The notes beneath the pieces were generated by a model, which was not told the origin of the DNA, did no database searches, and saw only the letters and a program-made list of their open reading frames with translations. The position numbers were made by a program, and so were the translations under genes. From NCBI RefSeq assembly GCF_001194135.2, contig NC_068990.1, positions 34,142,239-34,206,238 of the forward strand: 64,000 nt of DNA, in the 5' to 3' direction. Position 1 is the stretch's first letter; each line of letters opens with the position of its first letter. Of this stretch, positions 1 to 35,550 are shown in pieces. The DNA is from Octopus bimaculoides (taxonomy: Eukaryota).

Positions 1-84
1 TATATCGTCTTGGTTTGGTGTACATAGTAAGTCGTGTTGACGCTGGTGGTGTAGAGGCTGTTTGGTAGTAATCGTGTTGGTCAT
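1..84 (-). CDS. Possible first coding exon of a host gene running off the left edge (MTNTITTKQPLHHQRQHDLLCTPNQDDI...)
   Basis: First ATG (84-82) downstream of the TATA-containing promoter; the frame is open to the window edge. No homology recognised, so it could be 5'UTR. Confidence 0.2.
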   Translation of the reverse strand, partial: MTNTITTKQPLHHQRQHDLLCTPNQDDI

Positions 85-8487: not shown

Positions 8488-8902
8488 TATTCTATTACTT
8501 GTTTCAGTCATGTGACTGCGGCCATGCTGGAGCACCGCCTTAAAGGTTTTTAGTCCAACAAATCGACTCCAGGACTTATTCTTTGTAAACTTAGTATTAA
8601 TTCTATCTTTTGTTTTTTTACCAAACCGCTAAGTTACGGGGACGTAAACACACCAACATCGGTTGTCAAACGATAGTTGGGGAGCAAACACAGATACAAA
8701 GACACACACACACTCACAAACACACACACACATACATACATATATGGCAGTCTTCTTTCAGTTTCTGTCTACCAAATCCACTCATAAGGCTTTGGTTGAC
8801 CCGAGGCTATAGTAGAAGACACTTGCCCAAGGTGCCACGCAGTGGGACTGAACCCGGAACTATGCGGTTGGGAAGCAAGCTTCTTACCACACAGCCATGC
8901 CT
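8488..8902 (-). mobile_element. SINE-A, full length
   Basis: Head, core, (CA)n middle and tail all present on the minus strand. Confidence 0.9.
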
Positions 8903-14699: not shown

Positions 14700-16214
14700 T
14701 CAGTACCTCACTGATCTTGGTTGAACTGTCTGAGGAAGCCATCCTTTTGGAAGAGGGGTCCTATTTTGCAGCGTACTGAGGCTGTTTCTTTGGCATAATG
14801 AACGAAGGCCTTTGACAATGCTTTTTATAACTCAGGCTTCTTTATCTGCATAGGATTGTTGCAGACTTTTTTCTATCTCCTTCAGTGTTGTTTTTAGGCC
14901 AGACCTTTCGCTACTTTTAGAATGTTGGTTGAGGCGATTTACAACATACATTACGAGAGAGATAAGATACGCCACTGTGGAGGTGCGCTTCACAACGGAG
15001 GAGGAAGCAATAAAGCACTCCACAGAGGCAATAAGGACAGACAAATGGGTGATGTTGCCTTCGTACTGCGGCAAACGTGTGGCCAAGGTGCGAGTGGGTA
15101 AGGTACCACCCGAATTGAAAGAAGAATGGCTGATGACAGCCATAACGTATAATATGAAAGATGGGAAGATTCTGAAGGCTACAAGGACCCAGAAGTTAGA
15201 TTACTGGGGATATAGTATCGAATTAACGATTCAGGCAACAACAGAGGACTTGAATAGTGTGGTGGATGAGATTGTGCTGCTAGAAGATGTGAAGCTGAGA
15301 GCTATTGTGGAGGGTAGGCCACCAGTGTGTTTCACATGTGGAGAAAGGGGCCACATGAAGGCACGGTGCACCCAAAGAAAGCTACAAACAGAACAGGAGG
15401 AGAGACAGTAGAGTGTGGACCAGGTAGTATAGGGCAAGGCAACATAAACAGTAAAAGAAGCGGAGAAGGGATTCACTATGGTTAAAAAAAAAGGAGGAGG
15501 AGCAGAGGAATGCGTTCTCCGCCAGAGGAGCAAAAACAGGAGAGAGAAGAGGTGAGAAAAGAAACTGTGAAGGAGGGCAGTAGGAAGTAAAAAGAAAGTG
15601 GAGTTACCAGTGGAGAAAGAGTCGGAAACCCAACTGTATGAAGGTGAGATGGAGAGACTATTTATGGAGGAAGAAAAGAGAGAACCAAAAGTCCAAGAGA
15701 AAGGAAAGAAGATACGAGGAGGAGAGGGAGTATGGTATTATGTAACGTACCCCAAAAATGTTGAAACAGAGAAAAAGATAATCAAGTTACACTCAATAGT
15801 AAGAGTGGAGGTGCCTTCATACGTCTACGCGGAGGATATGAAGGCAATATTGATAGAAGAGGAAAACTACAGAAAATTGAAAGAGGTGTGGAGATAACAT
15901 TTACCTGCCAGGAGTGGAGGTGGAATTTAAAGAGTTGCCACCGTGGTGGATTTAAGAGATATCGAACCACTAATGAAGTTCTACTAAAGACAAAAAAAGT
16001 ATGAAATTAAAGGAAAAAAAAAAGAACAATTGTAAATAGTACATATAACGGTTTAAATGGTACTGCATGAGAGTGGGCCCCATGCGTCCTTTTTCATTTT
16101 TATATAACTTTCATTTCATTTACATTCATTTTAAGTTTTTTGTCCCCACTGTGGTCTTGTCTGTCCTTGTGGTGTCCCCATCTGTGTTTGGGGCTTTATG
16201 CCTAATAAAGAAAT
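14700..16214 (+). mobile_element. Tx1/L1-clade element 1: decayed ORF1 followed directly by 3'UTR and tail, no ORF2 (HAL1-like)
   Basis: ORF 14929-15411 has a CCHC knuckle (CFTCGERGHMKARC) and is homologous to the element 2 ORF1; the frame continues past stops (EKGFTMVKKKG); further ORF at 15598-15897; 3' tail ends aataaagaaat at 16214. The 5' boundary is approximate. Confidence 0.7.
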
Positions 16215-16435
16215 CGGTATTGTGACTTGTGAATAATTGAGAATAATTCTGTGGTGTTTTTTTTTTTTTGCTTGTAGGTATAGTTGAAATTGTTGTATCT
16301 GAATTCTTTCCTTGTGTTGTTATTAATAGCGTTCTGTGTATGGCCGACAGTGTGAACTTTTATACCCCTCTGTGAGGTGGGGAATTATCCATTTTTGTTG
16401 CGTATTCCCACAAATCTTGTTAAATTTTGTTTAAA

Positions 16436-18828
16436 ATGAATACTTCCTCTGCAGAGTAAAAAAAACAACTGTGAAATGTTAAGTATGCCAACAGCAGACA
16501 AACTTGTTGAACCGCCAGATAAAGATAAATTTTGCAGCTGCGGCTGGAGTGAAAAAAGAAAATTTATGTGTAGATCGAAGTATGCAAATGCAGCACCAAA
16601 ACATGTTTTCGAAGGAGGAGTACGACGTAAAAGCCACCCTCCCGAGTGAAATCAAAGAGGAAACCGCAAAAAAAAAAAAAAGTCGTATTTAAAACTGGTA
16701 ATAAAGGAAAAGAAACTCGACAAAGCACCAAAAGAAGAAATACAAAAATGCCTGCAATCTGGCAGGACATAGAATACCTGACCAGAGGGAAACGCTTTGC
16801 CAATGTAGTAGTTTATTTCAAAAGCGAAGAGAAGGCCAAAACACACTCAGTGCAACCTTTGAGAACCACAGACATTGTGTTGCTGCTAACATACTTAGGA
16901 AGGCGCACATCAATAATCACAACAGAAGAGATCCTGCCAGAAATGAACTCGTAGCCGTACTAATGGGGCTCGAAGAAGAAATAACGATATTAGAGGCCTC
17001 AAAATTCCACCAGCAGAACTGGAAGGGGCAAGGCCTCGAGGTCACCATCCAAGCGGTGCCACAGACCCTGGAAAAGATCATGGAAAATATACACCTCGGA
17101 GAAGAAACCACCTTACGGGCAATGGTGGAGGGAAGAAAACCCCGGTGCTTCGAATGTGGAGAGAAGGGCCACATTCGGGCAAACTGTCCTACCCGTAAGG
17201 TGGAGACGGCCCAAATAACTCTTGAGCCATTACTGCGGGAATTGAGCGACATTCCGAGACAGACAAGTTGTGGAGAATCGGTTTCAGCGTACGCGGACGA
17301 CATCACCACATCGTAACCGAAATGGATCACCTACAGAGGGTAGGCAAAGCCATTGAGGAATACGAGACGGTGGCAGGAGCAAAGGTTAATCGTGAAAAGT
17401 CAGACGGCTTGCAGCTCGGCACCTGGAAAGGCAAGTCGATGCCTCTTGACAGCGCCTTGGGACGTTGGACGGAGGGTCCGATTAAGTTGCTAGGAGTCCG
17501 GTTTGGACCAGGTCTCCGAACAGAGAAGAACTGGGACGAGGTAGCGAGAAGGGTGGCCCACATAGCCAAGACCTGGTCTTGGCAGTGGCTATCTCTGAAA
17601 GGGAGGAAGGAGGTGGCCAATGTGTTCATCGCATCGGTCATCACCTACCGCCTAACCGTCGTTCCCTGCCCTGATTCGTGGTTGAGCAGGCTGGAAAGAC
17701 AGCTCTTCTGCTTCTTGTGGAAGGGCTCGAATCCTCTTGTTAGACGCTCTATTTGCTGCCAACAACCGTTAAAGGGTGGGTTAAGGATGCCTTGGCTGAT
17801 GATGCGCAGGCACGCGCTGAGGTTGAAGCATCTGTGGCTCCATCTGGATGGTGATCGAGTGTGGTCTCCACTGGCGAAACAGATGTTTCCCAAGTTCACT
17901 TGTTTCGGTGAACTGGAAACCTGGTTCTATCGTAGATCGAAGTTAGATGCATGCTTTACGGAGTGTCGTAAGGCTCTCCGGATATTCCATCTCTCGGGCA
18001 ATGCCTGTGGTAGTGGTTCTACCACATTCTTCTATAGAGGGTTCGTAGAAGCGAAATGTGACGATGCCTTGGGGGAAGCCCTAGGTCTCGATGATAACCA
18101 GCTGGCCAATCTGTTCCAACGTACATTCGGGCCGAAGACACTGGATAACTTTAAAAAATTTTTGGCATGGCAATGTTACTGAGGAGCCCTACCTGTCCAA
18201 GATGTGGGCGGGACAGGGAAACTGTCCCGCACGCTATTGTTCAGTGTTCGGAAGTGTCATATATGTGGGTTTATGCCGAACAATTGTTGTCAATTACTGG
18301 AAGAGTACAGCTATCGACTGAATCAGTAGAAAAATTGACCCACAGGATTTTCTATCGAAAGAAGGTAAGAATTGCTTTCTCATAGAAATTGCAATTGCGA
18401 GAGAGGTGATTTGGAAGACGCGAGTGAAAGGGTTAATAAAAGGCACTTTTATCTCTGGCCCTGGCTTGGTGAATTTCTTCACCTTCATCCTAAGAAGGAA
18501 AATAGGGTTAGAGAGAAAATGCCTGTCCACGAAAATGTTTCAAGATCGATGGAAGAATGTCGCACGAATGTTGCGTATAGATGGGACCGCATGAATACAA
18601 CGCAGGATAAACTTAAAGCATCAGTGGTAAGGCGGGGCTCGTAGGGTCCGAGCATATCCCGTTTCTCCACTCTATTCTGTAATATTGTCCTGTATATGTT
18701 ATCATCCGAACTATTTATATTTACGTAAAATTTTAAAATTCATTTTTGTGTTAATTCATACGTTAAATCTGACCCAATATCAAATTGTACTGTCCCCTCT
18801 TTGTTGTCCTCTTGTGGGAAATAAAAAA
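16436..18828 (+). mobile_element. Tx1/L1-clade LINE element 2 with internal deletion (ORF1 joined to the distal half of RT)
   Basis: ORF1 knuckle CFECGEKGHIRANC; LEPLLREL...SAYADDIT; RT thumb (GAKVNREKS, KLLGVRF, LSLKGRKEVAN); C-terminal CPRCGRDRETVPHAIVQC; A-rich tail. No APE domain is visible. The 5' boundary is approximate. Confidence 0.9.
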
Positions 18829-18830
18829 TT

Positions 18831-19118
18831 TGCGAAATGCTTACCGGTATTGTGTCTGTCTTTATGTTCTGAGTTCAAATTCCGTCGAGGTCGACTTTGC
18901 CTTTCATCCTTGTGCTTGGAGTAGAAAATAATCGTTAGCACGCTGAACGAAATGCCTAGCAGTATTTCATCCGTCTCCACATTCTGAGTTCAAATTCTGC
19001 CGAGGTCGACTTTGCCTTTCATCCTCTTGGAGTCGATAAATCAAGTACCAGTGAAGCACTAAGTCGATGTAATCGACTAGTCCCCTGCCTTCAAATTTCA
19101 GGCTTTGTGTCCTCAGCA
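18831..19118 (+). mobile_element. Two head-to-tail SINE-B copies abutting the Tx1 tail
   Basis: ttctgagttcaaatt...gaggtcgactttgcctttcatcc occurs twice; junction near 18930. Confidence 0.85.
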
Positions 19119-19298
19119 GAAACGATTATTTATTGTCTTTTTTTTTTGTTTTTGTTTTTAGATTTAATTTTTTTTTAATTTCAGCTTTTTTGCTATTGTA
19201 TTCTAACATAAGTCTTAGCGTTTGGTTCTTCGCGAAACAATTATTGATAGGATTCTTGTATAGGAAACCGATAATTAATTCTAACTTGCCAAGTCTAT

Positions 19299-27588: not shown

Positions 27589-28127
27589 ACTATAGTATGC
27601 AGCACATAACAATTATATCAATAGTAATTTTCAAGAATAAGCAGTGCCTGTGCTTGAAGCCTTTTAAAGAGAAGAAAATCTTTGCACAGGACCAATCTCA
27701 CTCTCTAAACAACATATGCATTTGTTCAAAAAGAAGGACTACAGCATTGAGTGGAAATGAAGTCACTTGTGTTACATCCGAGCTTGCATTTCCCTAGAAA
27801 GAAGACTGGGGAGTTCTCACTTCCAACTGTTGGATGGCTTATGATGACTCTATAAAGTTTATCTGCCCATTGATAAATTTTGTTTTTACCCTACAGAATA
27901 TCCAACGAAAATCCTCCTCCTTACCAAGCAACCTTGATAAGGTGGCTGATTCAGTTGTCAAGGGCCTGACCATTTAATAGCTTGTTACATGTTATCAGTA
28001 GCAAAGTGTGAGCTAACTTATACACACACACACACACATGTATATATGTACATATGTGTATATATGCATATATACATATATGTACATATATGTATATATG
28101 CATATATACAAATATCTTTTGATTATT

Positions 28128-28420
28128 AAACTGTAGCCATGCTGGAGCATTGCCTTGAGGAATTTTAGCTGAACGTATTTACCCTAGAACTGTTTTTCTT
28201 TTAAGCCTGGTACTTATTCTGTTTGTTTCTTTTGCCAAACCATTACGTTGCAGGGATATAAACATACCAACACCAGTTGTAATGCAGTAATGTGCAGCTA
28301 ACATAGACAAAAAGACACACACACACATATATATATATGATGTGCTTCTTTCAGTTTCCATCTACCAAATTCACTCACAAGGCTCTGGTCAACCCAAGGC
28401 TATAGGAGAAGACATAGGAT
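28128..28420 (-). mobile_element. SINE-A, degenerate and CpG-decayed
   Basis: Recognisable tail and body with many CG>TG/CA changes. Confidence 0.7.
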
Positions 28421-31659: not shown

Positions 31660-33107
31660 TCTAATTTTGGTAACAGGTTAGTAATTTTGAGGAGGCAGGG
31701 TAACTCACTTACATAGACCCTAGTACTTGACTGGTATTTATTTGATTGATCCTAAGAGGAAGAAAGACAAAGTCAACTTTGGTAGAATATAAAGCTGAAA
31801 GAAATGCCACTTAGCATTTTGTCTGGCATGCTAAAGATTCTGCTAGCTTATTGTCTTTTTCTACTATAGGAAAAGTCCCTAAATTTTGGGGGAGGGACTA
31901 GCTAATTATATCAACCCCAGTGCTCAACTGGTACTTATTTTATTGACTCCCCAAAATGATGAAAGGTAAAGTTGATCTCATCAGAATTTGAAGTTAGAAT
32001 TTAAAACCAAAAGAAATGCCACAAAGTATTTTGTCTGGTGTGCTAACGATTCTTATTTCTTTATTGCCCACAAGGGGCTAAACATAGAGGAGACAAACAA
32101 AAAGATTAAGTTGATTACATTGACCCAGTGCGTAACTGGTACTTAATTTATCGACCCCGAAATGATGAAAGGCAAAGTTGACCTTGGTGGAATTTGAACT
32201 CAGAACGTTACAGCAGACAAAATACCGCTAAGCATTTCGCCCGGCATGCTAACATTTCTGTTTCTGCCAGCTCGCCGCCTTCTAACGTTTCTGCCATTTC
32301 GCCCGGTGTGCTAATGGTTCTGCTAGCTCACAACCTTAATAATAATCCTTTCTACTAAAAGCACAAGGCCTGAAATTTTGCAGAAGGAGACTAGTTGATT
32401 GCATTGATCCCAGTGTTCCACTGGTACTTAAATTATCGACCTCAAAAAGATGAAAGGCAAAGTCAACCTTGGCAGAATTTGAACGCAGAATGTGCAAATG
32501 GACAAAATGCTACTAACCATTTTACCTGATGTGCTAATGATTCTGCCAGCTCACCACGTTAATAATAATAATGGTGATAGTAATCGTTTCTACTATAGGT
32601 ACAAAATCTGAGATTAGGGAGAGGAGAAAAATCAACTACATTAACTGGTACTTATTTCATCAACCTCAAAAGGATGAAAGGCAAAGTCAATCCAGCATGT
32701 AACGAATCAGAAAAAATGCTTATAAGTAGTTTTTCTGGCATGATTTTATTACAGATGGGGGAAGTTGATTACATCAACCACAGTTCTTGATTCATACTTA
32801 TTTTATTGATCTTAAAAGGGTTAAAGGCATAGTTGATCTCAGAAAGTTACTAAGCAATTTGTCTATCTTGCTAATGGTTCTGTCAGCTGACCACCTTTAT
32901 AATAAAAGTAATAATAATCCTTTCTACTAAAGGTGCAAGGCCTGAAAGTTTGGTACCAGTGTTTCACTGGTACTTAATTTATCAAGCCCCTGAATGAATG
33001 ACAAGCTAAGTTGACCTTGGCAGAATTTGAACTCAGAATGTAAAGACAGGCGAAATTCTGCTAAGCATTTTGCCTGGTGTGCTAATGATTCTGCCAGCTC
33101 ACCACCT
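31660..33107 (-). mobile_element. Array of about 7 head-to-tail or nested SINE-B copies
   Basis: Repeated gatgaaaggcaaagt(t/c)(g/a)acct...gaatttgaactcagaa...gctaa.g.ttctgccagctc units; the youngest copy is about 32053-32280. Confidence 0.85.
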
Positions 33108-33120
33108 TAATAATAGTAAT

Positions 33121-33498
33121 AACAAGAGCACTCAGAGAGCGCAAACCTCTGCGAAGGCAACACCAATGTCCTCTCAACGATTAGCCAGAGATGATTTTTA
33201 AAATGAAAATATCTGAAGTAAACTTGACTGCTCTCACAAACGAGAATACTAAAAAAGGAACCTGACCACTCTCAAAAATTAAGTAAAAAAAAGCAGGAAA
33301 AATAATCCAGAATCTTTGTCCGGTACTGGATCAATCCCCAAATCTAATCAGTTCATGCCAGTCACGAGGCCAAACACCTCTGAAAGTTTCATCCAAATCC
33401 ATCCAGCTGTTCTTGAGATATCTTTCCACGGACAAACAAATAAACAAACAAACACGACTGAAAACAATACCTCTGCCTTCGCTAAGGCAGAGGTAATA
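33121..33498 (+). mobile_element. Helentron/HINE-like non-autonomous element
   Basis: Starts aacaagagc, with subterminal acctctgcgaaggca, an (ACAA)n microsatellite, and a perfect 11-bp hairpin acctctgcctt-cgct-aaggcagaggt (33469-33494) near the 3' end. Confidence 0.7.
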
Positions 33499-33507
33499 AC
33501 GATATGA

Positions 33508-34605
33508 TGAAAGGCAGCACGCTGACAGAAACGTTAGCATGTCGGGTAAAATGCTTAGCAGTATTTCATCTGTCTTTACATTCTGAGTTCAAATTCAACT
33601 TTGCCTTTCATCGGGGTTGATAAATTAAGTACCAGTTACGTACTGGAGTCAATCTAATCGACTGGCCCCCTCTCCAAATATTTTGGGCCCTGTGCCTAGT
33701 GTAGAAAATAATAATAATATGATGAACTGGCAGAGTTGTTGGTGTGCTGAATAGAATGCTTTCTTTGATTCCTTTCAAAGTCATTGTCATTATTATGAAA
33801 AGGGGAAGGCGACGAGCTGGCAAAATCATTAGCATGCCAAGGGAAAGGCTTAGCAGTATTTCATCTGTGCTCAGAGTTCAAATCCTGTTGAGGTCAACTG
33901 TCTTTCATTCTTTTAAGGTTGGTACATATAAAAGTCAAGAGTAAAATTGTTTGTGCTTTGGAGAACATTCCTTGTAGTATCTGTTCCAGTTCTTTGCATT
34001 CTGAGTTCACAGTCTGTGTTAGTATCAGTAGTCAAACATGGGAGAACATCGCTCAAACCACAGTTGACCAAGGTACTCACTGGATTGCAATCAGCTAGCA
34101 TAAAGACACGCTAAGGCTTCTTTCAACAGTGGATTGAAAGTACCTGAATGAAAAAGTCATTGTCATTATGAAAAGGGGAGGGCGACAAGCTGGCAGAATC
34201 ATTAGCATGCTGGGTGAAAGGCTTTGTGGTATTTCGTCTGCCACTACGTTCTGAGCTAAATTCTGCCGAGGTCGACTTTGCCTTTCATCCTTTCGGGGTC
34301 GATTAAATAAGTACCAGTTACTCACTGGAGTCAATGTAATCGACTTAATCCCTTAGTCTGTCCTTGTTTGTCCCTCTATGTTTAGCCCCTTGTGGGCAAT
34401 AAAGAAATAAGAATCATTAGCATGCTGGGTGAAAGGCTTAGTCGTATTTCGTCTGCCACTGCGTTCTGAGCTCAATTCTGCCGAGATCGACTTTGCTTTT
34501 CATCCTTTCAGGGTCGATAAATTAAGTACCAGTGAAACATTGAGGTCGATGTAATCGACTAGTCCCTGCCCCCAAATTTCAGGCCTGGTGCCTATAGTAG
34601 TAAGC
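33508..34605 (+). mobile_element. Cluster of about 4-5 plus-strand SINE-B copies, including a nested pair
   Basis: Copies at about 33508-33715, 33805-33925 and 34181-34605 (nested, junction 34410/34411). Confidence 0.85.
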
Positions 34606-35550
34606 TTTATTATGAAAAGGGTGGTGGAATGGTAAAATAATTTTTCGTATTGAAAAAATACTTTTCAGCATTTGTTTTGGCTCTTTTTGTCATGAGCTCA
34701 AATACTGGTGAAACTCGAAACTTAAACTTCATTGAAAATCCATTATTAAAACCATTCCACCAATGATAATCCTACCATATTGTCCAATATAGTATTGTTT
34801 ATTTAAGATAGTAAAGTGTTATTTGAGTAGATCTGTTGTTTCTGGTTGAGTGGCTGTATACAGGCTTCCGTCGTGGTAAAGTACCAGGGTCGATTAAATA
34901 GACTGTGGATAGATTCATCCCCTTAAGAAGTGAGTCCCTGAGGCAGTATTAAAAGATCATCTTGCCATATTTATGGTCAAACCATTCTAACTATTCCTTC
35001 CCTGTCTTCACTTTAGATTTACATTGTGAAATAAAATGTAAAAAAGATTTGTTGTTTATAGTATACATATTACAAAGGTGACATTACAAATCATATCGAA
35101 AATTTTCTTTAGCTAAATAGATACATTGATTTGGAAATGAATATTTTAAAATGAAACAGTAGACCGCATCTTTTGGTAACAGAATATAGTCGAATATTCT
35201 AACCTCAATCCATGAAGAATGATAAAGAAAAGCGATCAGTGGGATTTGAACTCAGAACATAAAAGGACATAACTAAATTCACTATTGAATACCTCTCTTC
35301 AATGCCTTCTTTAAATCAAGATACGAAGCAGAAATTATTTCCTTTGACCTTTCCTTACAAAATTCAAACTTTCTACATTTTGAAAATGTTATTTTAAAGC
35401 AATGCTGATTAAAATAATTAAAGTTTCGCAGAAGAAAATTAAGGATATGAAAAATTGATCGGAAGAATATGAAAAATTAAAATAGCCGGTATTAGCACTC
35501 TTAATCGATAGAAAACATAAAACAAAAAGTTCAACTGAAATGAAGGTTCG

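What the first reader, a model, noticed from the sequence alone, without database searches (positions are those of the whole stretch)
31860..34605. SINE-B inserts site-specifically into its own head, with 25-29 bp target duplications
Seen: two oppositely oriented nested insertions use the same site. Plus case: gaatcattagcatgctgggtgaaaggctt is identical at 34196-34224 and 34411-34439, including non-consensus bases, and brackets a young copy ending ...gggcaataaagaaataa. Minus case: attt(c/t)g(c/t)c(c/t)ggtgtgctaa(t/c)g(g/a)ttc at 32296-32320 and 32028-32052 brackets the young copy 32053-32280. A third tail|aatcgttagca junction occurs near 18930. Established: Tx1-clade endonucleases are often sequence-specific, and Xenopus Tx1L leaves a 23-bp duplication. 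Inference: a Tx1 enzyme recognises the SINE-B head (GAATCGTTAGC...), perhaps because its natural target is a related tRNA-like sequence. The SINE would then be both cargo and target, seeding self-nesting arrays such as 31.7-34.6 kb.
Basis: partly seen in the sequence, partly recalled or inferred. Interest (0 to 1): 0.8.

Follow-up and report, generated by a model that had tools for sequence, protein, structure and literature searches.

The report
SINE copies nested in SINE heads
Two younger copies of a short retrotransposon (SINE) have each landed at the same nucleotide inside the front end of an older related copy, duplicating about 26-27 bases, which hints that its helper enzyme prefers that spot, although two events in one window cannot prove it.

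Summary
A SINE subfamily with the tail ...CCCTTGTGGGCAATAAAGAAATA ("B") sits twice, in opposite orientations, immediately before AGAATCGTTAGC of an older SINE with a different tail ("A").

- **Plus case:** a 29-30-nt duplicate is identical. It is the only identical pair among 91 head pairs.
- **Minus case:** the duplicate is 20/25 identical, which is no better than unrelated heads. Position and age support it instead: the insert keeps 10/17 CpGs, the host 1/14.
- **Cut positions:** both events fit one pair of cuts, about 26-27 bp apart.

A partner LINE is in the window. It has an L1/Tx1-type ORF2 C-terminus and a CCHC ORF1, and its 3' end shares about 60 nt with the B tail.

Limits:
- Only two exact events exist.
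- One of three B copies lies outside any SINE.
- Neither LINE copy uses the site. One ends 18 nt further into a head.
- The "third junction" has an A-type tail and is ambiguous.
- Most of the 31.7-34.6 kb array is A-type copies joined tail-to-head through (ATT)n, not head nesting.
- Tx1 clade membership and tRNA origin could not be shown.
- No other DNA of this genome was reachable.

Best reading: target-primed insertion with a preference for this head motif. This resembles the published Tx1-Mar/SINEU system.

The parts
34150..34195 (+). Plus case: 5' leader and first 16 nt of the host SINE head (aaagtcattgtcattatgaaaaggggagggcgacaagctggc)
   Evidence: nhmmer hit 34181-34345 starts at model 2. 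Leader and H1 match the copy at 33778-33823 closely and differ from B-type heads.
34195..34224 (+). Plus case: upstream copy of the duplicated target (AGAATCATTAGCATGCTGGGTGAAAGGCTT)
   Evidence: Identical to 34410-34439. 0/4 CpGs kept, against 7/11 in the B body that follows.
34225..34409 (+). Plus case: inserted SINE-B body and tail, joined in register to the host head
   Evidence: B-tail nhmmer hit 34336-34409, E 4e-15. Alignment with the other B copies.
34410..34604 (+). Plus case: downstream target copy (34410-34439) and the rest of the host SINE, with an A-type tail
   Evidence: nhmmer 34410-34560 starts at model 16. A-tail hit 34551-34604.
32296..32337 (-). Minus case: orphan host head (A-type H1 aaggttgtgagctagc plus AGAACCATTAGCACACCGGGCGAAAT)
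   Evidence: nhmmer 32335-32295, model 2-42, E 1e-6. It is preceded by the (att)n linker of the neighbouring array copy.
32282..32295 (-). Minus case: 14 extra nucleotides (ggcagaaacgttag) at the 5' join, copied from a B-type head
   Evidence: Read directly. It carries the same T-to-A variant as the insert's own head.
32054..32281 (-). Minus case: full-length inserted SINE-B, with a 6-nt AGAAAC/AGAAAT duplication in its own head
   Evidence: nhmmer core 32279-32109 and B tail 32117-32055. CpG kept 10/17, non-CpG divergence 5%.
31858..32053 (-). Minus case: downstream target copy (32053-32028) and the rest of the old host SINE, with an A-type tail
   Evidence: nhmmer 32053-31904 starts at model 16. 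A tail 31906-31858. CpG kept 1/14, non-CpG divergence 15%.
40230..40445 (-). Solitary, youngest SINE-B copy, in non-SINE DNA; 5'-truncated near GTTAGC, no clear target duplication
   Evidence: CpG kept 14/15.
16142..16214 (+). 3' end of LINE#1; its tail shares about 60 nt with the SINE-B tail
   Evidence: Alignment A1. nhmmer B-tail hit 16157-16214. An ORF1 with a CCHC knuckle lies upstream at 14929-15411.
16646..18828 (+). LINE#2, internally deleted: ORF1-like CCHC region fused to RT motif YADD, then thumb and zf-RVT C-terminus, then a 3' tail related to the B tail
   Evidence: Translations. phmmer to human L1 ORF2p 716-889, E about 1e-5. zf-CCHC, zf-RVT. Tail hit 18790-18828.
18830..19122 (+). 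Two A-type SINE pieces after LINE#2: M (18830-18929, from core ~35) and R (18929-19122, from core ~18)
   Evidence: nhmmer 18832-18927 (model 35-126) and 18929-19078 (model 17-167). Sequence.
32342..33110 (-). Four older A-type SINE copies joined head-to-tail through (ATT)n-like linkers
   Evidence: nhmmer starts at model 2-3 for 33106, 32895 and 32557. A tails at 32919, 32586 and 32347. Linkers read.

Best explanation
Two separate target-primed reverse transcription events put LINE-dependent SINE-B copies into the first part of older SINEs that share the same head.

**Cuts.** In both events the bottom strand was nicked between GGC and AGAATCG (core C16|A17, ambiguous by one A). The top strand was cut after core 42-43, giving a duplication of about 26-27 bp.

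**5' joins.** In the plus case the host's duplicated head annealed to the homologous part of the new cDNA. The old head and the new body therefore read as one continuous SINE. In the minus case the cDNA ran to the RNA 5' end, picked up 14 extra nucleotides by a template jump, and was joined out of register.

**Cause.** The most likely cause of the shared site is a sequence preference of the partner LINE's endonuclease for this head motif. The partner is an L1/Tx1-type element whose tail SINE-B carries. It is a preference, not an absolute requirement.

**Shown and inferred.** Shown: the anatomy, the age order in the minus case, and the LINE-SINE tail sharing. Inferred: which enzyme cuts, where the second cut falls, and that the site is preferred genome-wide.
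For: - Both B tails are followed by AGAATC(A/G)TTAGC at model position 16.
- Plus duplicate is 30/30 identical, the only identical pair of 91. It is host-type: 0/4 CpGs, with variants at core 23, 30 and 42 shared with the copy at 33822. The other B copies carry the standard head instead.
- In the minus case the insert is much younger than the host: CpG 10/17 against 1/14, non-CpG divergence 5% against 15%.
- The orphan head has the A-type H1 and sits after an (att)n linker, where an array member should start.
- Duplicate ends are bracketed at core 42-48 (plus) and 42-43 (minus), so one stagger fits both.
- The events are independent: different hosts, leaders and 5' joins.
- LINE#1's tail shares about 60 nt with the B tail. 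LINE#2's ORF2 matches L1 ORF2p.
- Random-placement probabilities are 7.5e-5 overall and 0.02-0.055 conditional.
- Precedent: Tx1-Mar LINEs and SINEU share one target, with a 16-bp duplication and tandem copies sandwiching it (PMC4494074). Tx1L endonuclease is sequence-specific in vitro (PMC1950540).
Against: - Only two exact events, and they were picked post hoc.
- The youngest B copy (40230-40445) is not in a SINE and shows no long duplication.
- Neither LINE copy uses the site. LINE#2 abuts a head at core ~35, and LINE#1's flank is not SINE by nhmmer.
- The minus duplicate's identity (21/26) is no better than unrelated heads.
- In the plus case, host and insert have equal CpG retention (7/11 each), so their order cannot be dated.
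- Three of the five 'non-consensus' bases of the 29-mer also occur in a third copy at 33822. They are partly subfamily markers rather than private mutations.
- No endonuclease domain is available to examine.
Confidence: 0.55

Rival explanations
1. There is no dedicated site. The partner LINE merely favours SINE-rich or A/T-rich DNA, or any part of a SINE head, and two hits on the same nucleotide are a coincidence noticed after the fact.
For: - Given three ends already inside SINE cores, two coincide with probability 0.02-0.055, which is not negligible for a scan of many windows.
- LINE#2's junction is in a head but at core ~35.
- One B copy lies outside any SINE.
- A-type copies also pile up next to each other.
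Against: - Both events share the 3' junction and also a compatible 5' boundary at core 42-43, in the same orientation relative to the host.
- Three of five LINE-type 3' ends lie in same-orientation SINE cores, which has probability 1e-4 at random. Some targeting of SINE heads is needed in any case.
Confidence: 0.2
2. The junctions are chimeras made in one event. Reverse transcriptase copying a SINE RNA stalls at a fixed point in the head, jumps to the 3' end of a SINE-B RNA and continues. Alternatively, a B-A dimer amplified as a unit.
For: - Several copies start at about the same head position: 34410, 32053, 18929 and possibly 40445.
- The minus case shows clear template-jump debris at its 5' end.
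- In the plus case both halves have the same CpG retention.
Against: - In the minus case the downstream half is far older than the B half, CpG 1/14 against 10/17. They were not inserted together.
- A chimera predicts no upstream partial head, yet one is present (32337-32296).
- In the plus case the B element carries the host's head variant rather than a B-type head.
- The two loci differ in host type, so they are not copies of one dimer.
Confidence: 0.08
3. DNA-level rearrangement within a SINE array produced the partial head duplications. Candidates are unequal recombination, gene conversion, or slippage between AGAA motifs.
For: - The region is a dense array of similar repeats.
- The plus join is in register, as recombination would give.
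- A 6-nt AGAAAC/AGAAAT duplication shows that local slippage does occur.
Against: - The sequence between the duplicates is a complete B-type 3' half with a LINE-derived tail, and it ends exactly at the tail's last base in both cases.
- Both AGAA-containing motifs are retained at the junction.
- Recombination between A-type array members cannot create a B tail. No other B copy lies nearby to serve as donor.
Confidence: 0.07
4. Targeting is by tethering to the RNA polymerase III transcription complex bound on the SINE's internal promoter, not by DNA sequence read by the endonuclease. This would give orientation-specific insertion in or near the box-A region at somewhat variable positions.
For: - All SINE-associated LINE-type 3' ends lie in the first ~35 nt of a head and in the host's orientation: core 17, 17 and 35.
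- The site lies in the stretch that by eye resembles a box A (TGGCAGAATCG).
- From my own knowledge, not tested here: Dictyostelium TRE elements and yeast Ty3 are positioned by Pol III factors.
Against: - The host in the minus case is old and CpG-decayed, and may no longer have been transcribed.
- Two events at the same nucleotide with the same stagger look more like direct sequence reading.
- No tRNA-like structure is detectable.
- Nothing here tests protein contacts.
Confidence: 0.1

Closest known systems
Tx1-Mar LINEs with SINEU SINEs in crocodilians (Kojima 2015, PMC4494074)
   Same: A LINE and the SINEs it mobilises share one target inside another abundant repeat. The target duplication is long and of fixed sequence (16 bp there). 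Tandem SINE copies sandwich a duplication. Strength of preference differs between SINE families (13-90%).
   Different: There the target is an unrelated Mariner DNA transposon. Here the target is the head of the SINE's own wider family, so cargo and target are homologous and one join is in register. Here the duplication is about 26-27 bp. Clade membership of the LINE is not established, and only two events were seen.
Xenopus Tx1L inserting into Tx1D (cited in PMC1950540 and PMC4494074)
   Same: An APE-type LINE with a sequence-specific endonuclease inserts at one position of another repeat. I could not check this number because the primary papers are not held.
   Different: The target is a DNA transposon and no SINE partner is involved. 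Specificity there was shown biochemically, and here it was not.
Other target-specific Tx1-group elements: Keno (U2 snRNA genes), Kibi and Koshi (microsatellites) (PMC4494074)
   Same: The targets are multicopy small-RNA genes or simple repeats. The A-type copies here, joined through (ATT)n, behave like microsatellite- or tail-directed elements.
   Different: No small-RNA gene target was found here. The SINE head gives no tRNA hit with ARAGORN or Rfam.
L1 5'-junction microhomology and template-jump products (general knowledge of L1 biology)
   Same: The 5' end of the insert is resolved by annealing to target sequence (plus case) or carries extra copied nucleotides (minus case).
   Different: Because the target is homologous to the insert, annealing here spans tens of nucleotides and recreates a complete mosaic SINE.

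Membership tests
Target-specific Tx1-clade LINE/SINE system | LINE RT and APE endonuclease group with the Tx1 clade in a phylogeny | not testable with these tools
   The window holds only the RT motif C onward, the thumb and a zf-RVT C-terminus, plus ORF1 CCHC knuckles. The thumb matches human L1 ORF2p 716-889 at E about 1e-5. That shows the L1/Tx1 superfamily, not the clade. No TE reference library is available.
Target-specific Tx1-clade LINE/SINE system | The SINE shares its 3' tail with the LINE | tested here: met
   About 60 nt of LINE#1's 3' end (16157-16214) align with the B tail. LINE#2's end is more diverged.
Target-specific Tx1-clade LINE/SINE system | A substantial fraction of copies is flanked by the same target sequence at the same position (over 20% in PMC4494074) | tested here: inconclusive
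   2 of 3 SINE-B copies and 0 of 2 LINE copies are at the exact site. One LINE is in a head at core ~35. The sample is far too small. Genome-wide data were unreachable.
Target-specific Tx1-clade LINE/SINE system | Target duplication of constant length and sequence | tested here: inconclusive
   The boundaries are compatible with one 26-27-bp stagger (core 17 to 42/43). However, the plus case is only bracketed (42-48), and the minus duplicate is 20/25 identical.
tRNA-derived SINE (SINE2) | The head is recognisably derived from a tRNA, with box A and box B in a cloverleaf-like context | tested here: not met
   ARAGORN finds no tRNA in the window. Rfam at E<=1 (cluster) and E<=10 (youngest copy) gives no tRNA match. 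Only by-eye resemblance remains: TGGCAGAATCG to box A and GAGTTCAAATTCC to box B.
SINE (LINE-dependent non-autonomous retrotransposon) | Short, non-coding, many diverged copies, LINE-derived tail, variable 5' truncation | tested here: met
   18 core matches with E<1e-3, about 3.9% of the window. Two tail types are present, one shared with a LINE. Ages are spread, with CpG retention from 0/16 to 14/15.

The most novel reading that the evidence does not exclude
The head shared by this SINE family contains a landing site read by its own partner LINE's endonuclease, so the SINE is both cargo and target. Because host and insert are homologous, the 5' join can form in register. This instantly creates a complete mosaic SINE with an old promoter-bearing head and a new body and tail. 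That would be a built-in route to module shuffling between SINE subfamilies and to self-nesting clusters.
Probability: 0.3. Interest if true: 0.65.

Novelty: new variant of a known kind. Interest (0 to 1): 0.45.

Why it matters
If the preference holds genome-wide, it would extend target-specific L1/Tx1-type retrotransposition to a case where the target is the element's own SINE family.

That would have three consequences:
- It would confine new insertions to DNA that is already 'junk', a safe-harbour strategy.
- It would help explain dense SINE clusters.
- Through in-register joins, it would offer a concrete mechanism for the mosaic ('jigsaw') structure of mollusc SINE subfamilies.

It would also supply a defined ~30-bp substrate for studying how an APE-type endonuclease sets both nicks about 26 bp apart.

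If it does not hold, the locus is just two nested SINEs in a repeat-rich region.

Tried and rejected
1. **Sampling the genome by DNA.** Scans for the SINE core and the B tail in viral, metagenome and prokaryote-genome collections all gave 0 hits.
2. **Sampling by protein.** An antisense open frame across the SINE, used as a protein query, gave no candidate. It was meant to read off what follows the head in other copies.
3. **Using the LINE ORF2 C-terminus.** It gave five relatives at 35-64% identity. The two contigs retrieved (under 1.8 kb) stop before the 3' tail, and a third look-up found no record.
4. **Searching papers for stretches of the SINE sequence.** None found. Cephalopod and mollusc SINE papers gave nothing on self-insertion.
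5. **A SINE after LINE#1's tail.** The idea rested on a shared CGGTATTGTG. It is not supported by blastn (E 8.5) or nhmmer.
6. **A possible old B-type tail at 32763-32743 abutting a head at core ~28.** nhmmer does not detect it, so it is left as uncertain.
7. **A possible LINE-like tail upstream of the solitary B copy (ctgtaatagaa).** The alignment is no better than shuffles.
8. **AGAA microhomology or tandem duplication.** Rejected, because both motifs are intact at the junctions.
9. **Inverted segmental duplication of one ancestral nested structure.** Rejected, because hosts, leaders, 5' joins and ages differ.
10. **Checking the 23-bp Tx1L duplication in the primary papers.** They are not held.
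Full report
**What the window is.** The window is an AT-rich draft eukaryotic assembly with many N runs, microsatellites and transposon debris. The SINE reminds me of cephalopod SINEs, but that is recollection and I could not confirm the organism.

**SINE census.**
- A profile built from the window's own copies finds 18 core matches with E<1e-3, about 3.9% of the non-N bases.
- Eleven of them are packed into 31.7-34.6 kb.
- They form a minus-oriented block (31704-33106) and a plus-oriented block (33513-34604), separated by an unrelated ~390-bp element (33116-33508).
- Two tail types exist. 'A' ends ...CAAATTTCAGGCCTTGTGCCTATAGTAGAAAGG followed by (ATT)n. 'B' ends ...GTCTGTCCTTGTTTGTCCCCTCTGTGTTTAGCCCCTTGTGGGCAATAAAGAAATA.

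**The observation.**
- Both stated repeats are at the stated coordinates.
- *Plus case.* The 29-mer is identical, or 30/30 with the preceding A. It is the only identical pair among 91 pairs of heads; the next best is 27/30 and the mean is 21.7/30.
- *Minus case.* Identity is 20/25. That is not exceptional, because each partner is closer to some other copy than to the other.
- In both cases the sequence between the repeats ends with the exact 16-mer GGGCAATAAAGAAATA, followed by AGAATC(A/G)TTAGC.
- *Third junction, at 18929.* It is real, but its tail is A-type. The tail's AAT-rich end merges with gAATcg, so the break is defined only to core 18-22.

**Are these insertions, and are they independent?**
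- *Minus case.*
  - The insert is a full-length B copy. It keeps 10/17 CpGs and has 5% non-CpG divergence.
  - The downstream host keeps 1/14 CpGs and has 15% divergence. The insert is therefore clearly younger, which excludes a chimera made in one event.
  - The upstream 41-nt 'orphan head' has the A-type first segment (aaggttgtgagc). This matches its array neighbours and differs from B's aaggcggcgagc.
  - The orphan head follows an (att)n linker, exactly where the next array member should begin.
  - Orphan head plus downstream remainder therefore form one old A-type copy, split with a duplication.
- *Plus case.*
  - Host and insert have equal CpG retention, 7/11 each, so they cannot be dated against each other.
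  - The duplicated 30-mer has 0/4 CpGs and carries variants shared with the copy at 33822.
  - The leader in front of it matches that copy's leader.
  - The other two B copies have the standard head.
  - The 5' part of the apparent 'young copy' therefore belongs to the host, and the B body is joined to it in register.
- The two loci differ in host, leader, 5' join and age. They are not copies of one ancestral structure.

**One pair of cuts fits both.**
- The 3' junction is between core C16 and A17 in both cases, ambiguous by one A.
- In the plus case the last host-specific base of the upstream duplicate is core 42, and the first B-specific signal is at core 49-50.
- In the minus case the orphan head ends at core 42 or 43.
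- A bottom-strand nick at C16|A17 and a top-strand cut after core 42-43 therefore explain both events. This is a 26-27-bp stagger.
- The plus case's in-register join is what target-primed reverse transcription predicts when the 3' end of the cut top strand is homologous to the cDNA. That 3' end is host head sequence.
- The minus case was resolved differently. It carries 14 extra nucleotides copied from a B-type head, which is a template jump.

**The partner LINE.**
- Two decayed LINEs lie at about 14.9-16.2 kb and 16.6-18.8 kb. Each has an ORF1 with a CCHC knuckle.
- LINE#2 also has RT motif YADD, a thumb that matches human L1 ORF2p residues 716-889 (E about 1e-5), and a zf-RVT C-terminus.
- LINE#1's last ~60 nt align with the B tail, and LINE#2's end is a more diverged version.
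- So SINE-B's dependence on an L1/Tx1-type LINE is supported.
- Tx1 clade membership is not testable here. No endonuclease or N-terminal RT is present, and no TE reference library is available.

**Evidence against strict site specificity.**
- The youngest B copy (40230-40445, CpG 14/15) sits in non-SINE DNA without a long duplication.
- LINE#2's tail abuts a SINE head at core ~35, not 17.
- LINE#1's 3' flank is not recognisably SINE.
- Three of the five 'non-consensus' bases of the 29-mer are shared with a third copy, so they are partly subfamily markers.
- The hosts are A-type. The target is the family's common head rather than SINE-B's 'own' head.
- No tRNA signal is detectable in the head, so a tRNA-related natural target is unsupported.

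**The array.**
- Five, possibly six, of nine A-type tails are followed by an (ATT)n-like linker and then the full-length 5' end of the next copy.
- The 31.7-34.6 kb cluster is thus mainly a tail-to-head A-type array. Insertion into (ATT)n tails explains it most simply.
- Only two of its members are head-nested B copies.

**Chance.**
- Random placement of five LINE-type 3' ends puts at least 3 in a same-orientation SINE core with probability 1e-4.
- It puts at least 2 at the same model coordinate +-1 with probability 7.5e-5.
- Conditional on three ends being inside SINE cores, two coincide with probability 0.019-0.055.
- These are post hoc figures for a feature chosen because it was striking.

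**Alternatives considered.**
- *AGAA microhomology or tandem duplication.* Rejected, because both AGAA-containing motifs are intact at the junctions.
- *One-step chimeras or dimer amplification.* These fail on the age difference, the orphan head and the host-type head in the plus case.
- *Recombination.* It cannot supply a B tail.
- *Tethering to Pol III factors.* This remains a low-probability alternative. It would explain why all three SINE-associated 3' ends lie within the first ~35 nt of a head in host orientation.

**Comparison with known systems.**
- The closest published system is Tx1-Mar with SINEU in crocodilians. There the LINEs and their SINEs share a target inside an abundant repeat, with a 16-bp duplication and tandem copies sandwiching it. 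Preference ranges from 13% to 90% between SINE families (PMC4494074).
- Tx1L's endonuclease is sequence-specific in vitro (PMC1950540).
- Possibly new here: the target is the SINE family's own head, so some joins are in register and yield complete mosaic SINEs.

**What could not be done.** No other DNA of this genome could be reached by DNA scans, by protein search or by contig look-up. The decisive genome-wide tabulation therefore remains to be done.

**Verdict.**
- Nested insertion at one head position with a ~26-27-bp duplication is well supported.
- A sequence preference of an L1/Tx1-type partner is the best explanation, with confidence about 0.55.
- Strict site specificity, Tx1 membership, a tRNA-related target and array seeding by head nesting are not established.

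Noticed in passing
window 33116-33508: An unrelated ~390-bp element with a terminal hairpin (cctctgccttcgctaaggcagagg, 33468-33495) lies exactly between the minus- and plus-oriented SINE arrays. The SINE heads on both sides point away from it, each separated from it by an (att)-like linker.
   Followed up: partly
window 32254-32265 and 32282-32295 (minus strand): The inserted B copy of the minus case has a 6-nt duplication AGAAAC|AGAAAT inside its own head, at the same motif that serves as target. It also has 14 extra nucleotides (ggcagaaacgttag) at its 5' join. This could be a footprint of nicking and repair, or of template jumping.
   Followed up: partly
window 33715-33762: A second orphan SINE head (model 5-46) ends about where the two duplications end. 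It is followed by non-SINE sequence and then a full-length copy, so it does not fit the nested-insertion pattern.
   Followed up: partly
window 31858-33110 and 33513-34711: A-type SINE copies are chained tail-(ATT)n-head: five clear cases and one weak case out of nine tails. This suggests microsatellite- or tail-directed insertion by a different or related LINE.
   Followed up: partly
window 33778-33823 and 34150-34195: Two SINE copies share a near-identical ~45-nt leader (aaagtcattgtcattat..gaaaagggga.ggcgac.agctggc) upstream of the usual head. This is either a longer 5' end of one subfamily or a local duplication.
   Followed up: no
window 14929-18828: Two decayed L1/Tx1-type LINEs lie in tandem. 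The second has ORF1 fused directly to RT motif C (an internal deletion) and several frameshifts.
   Followed up: partly
window 44640-45203: An ORF with the HTH_48 domain of Mos1-type mariner transposases (E 7e-13).
   Followed up: no
window 8547-8684, 28040-28280, 45337-45678, 39880-40110: Another short interspersed repeat family, unrelated to the SINE studied here.
   Followed up: no
window 40170-40193 and 40563-40586: A 24-nt inverted repeat (22/24) flanks the solitary SINE-B copy at 40230-40445. That copy may lie inside a small hairpin-forming or TIR-bearing element.
   Followed up: no
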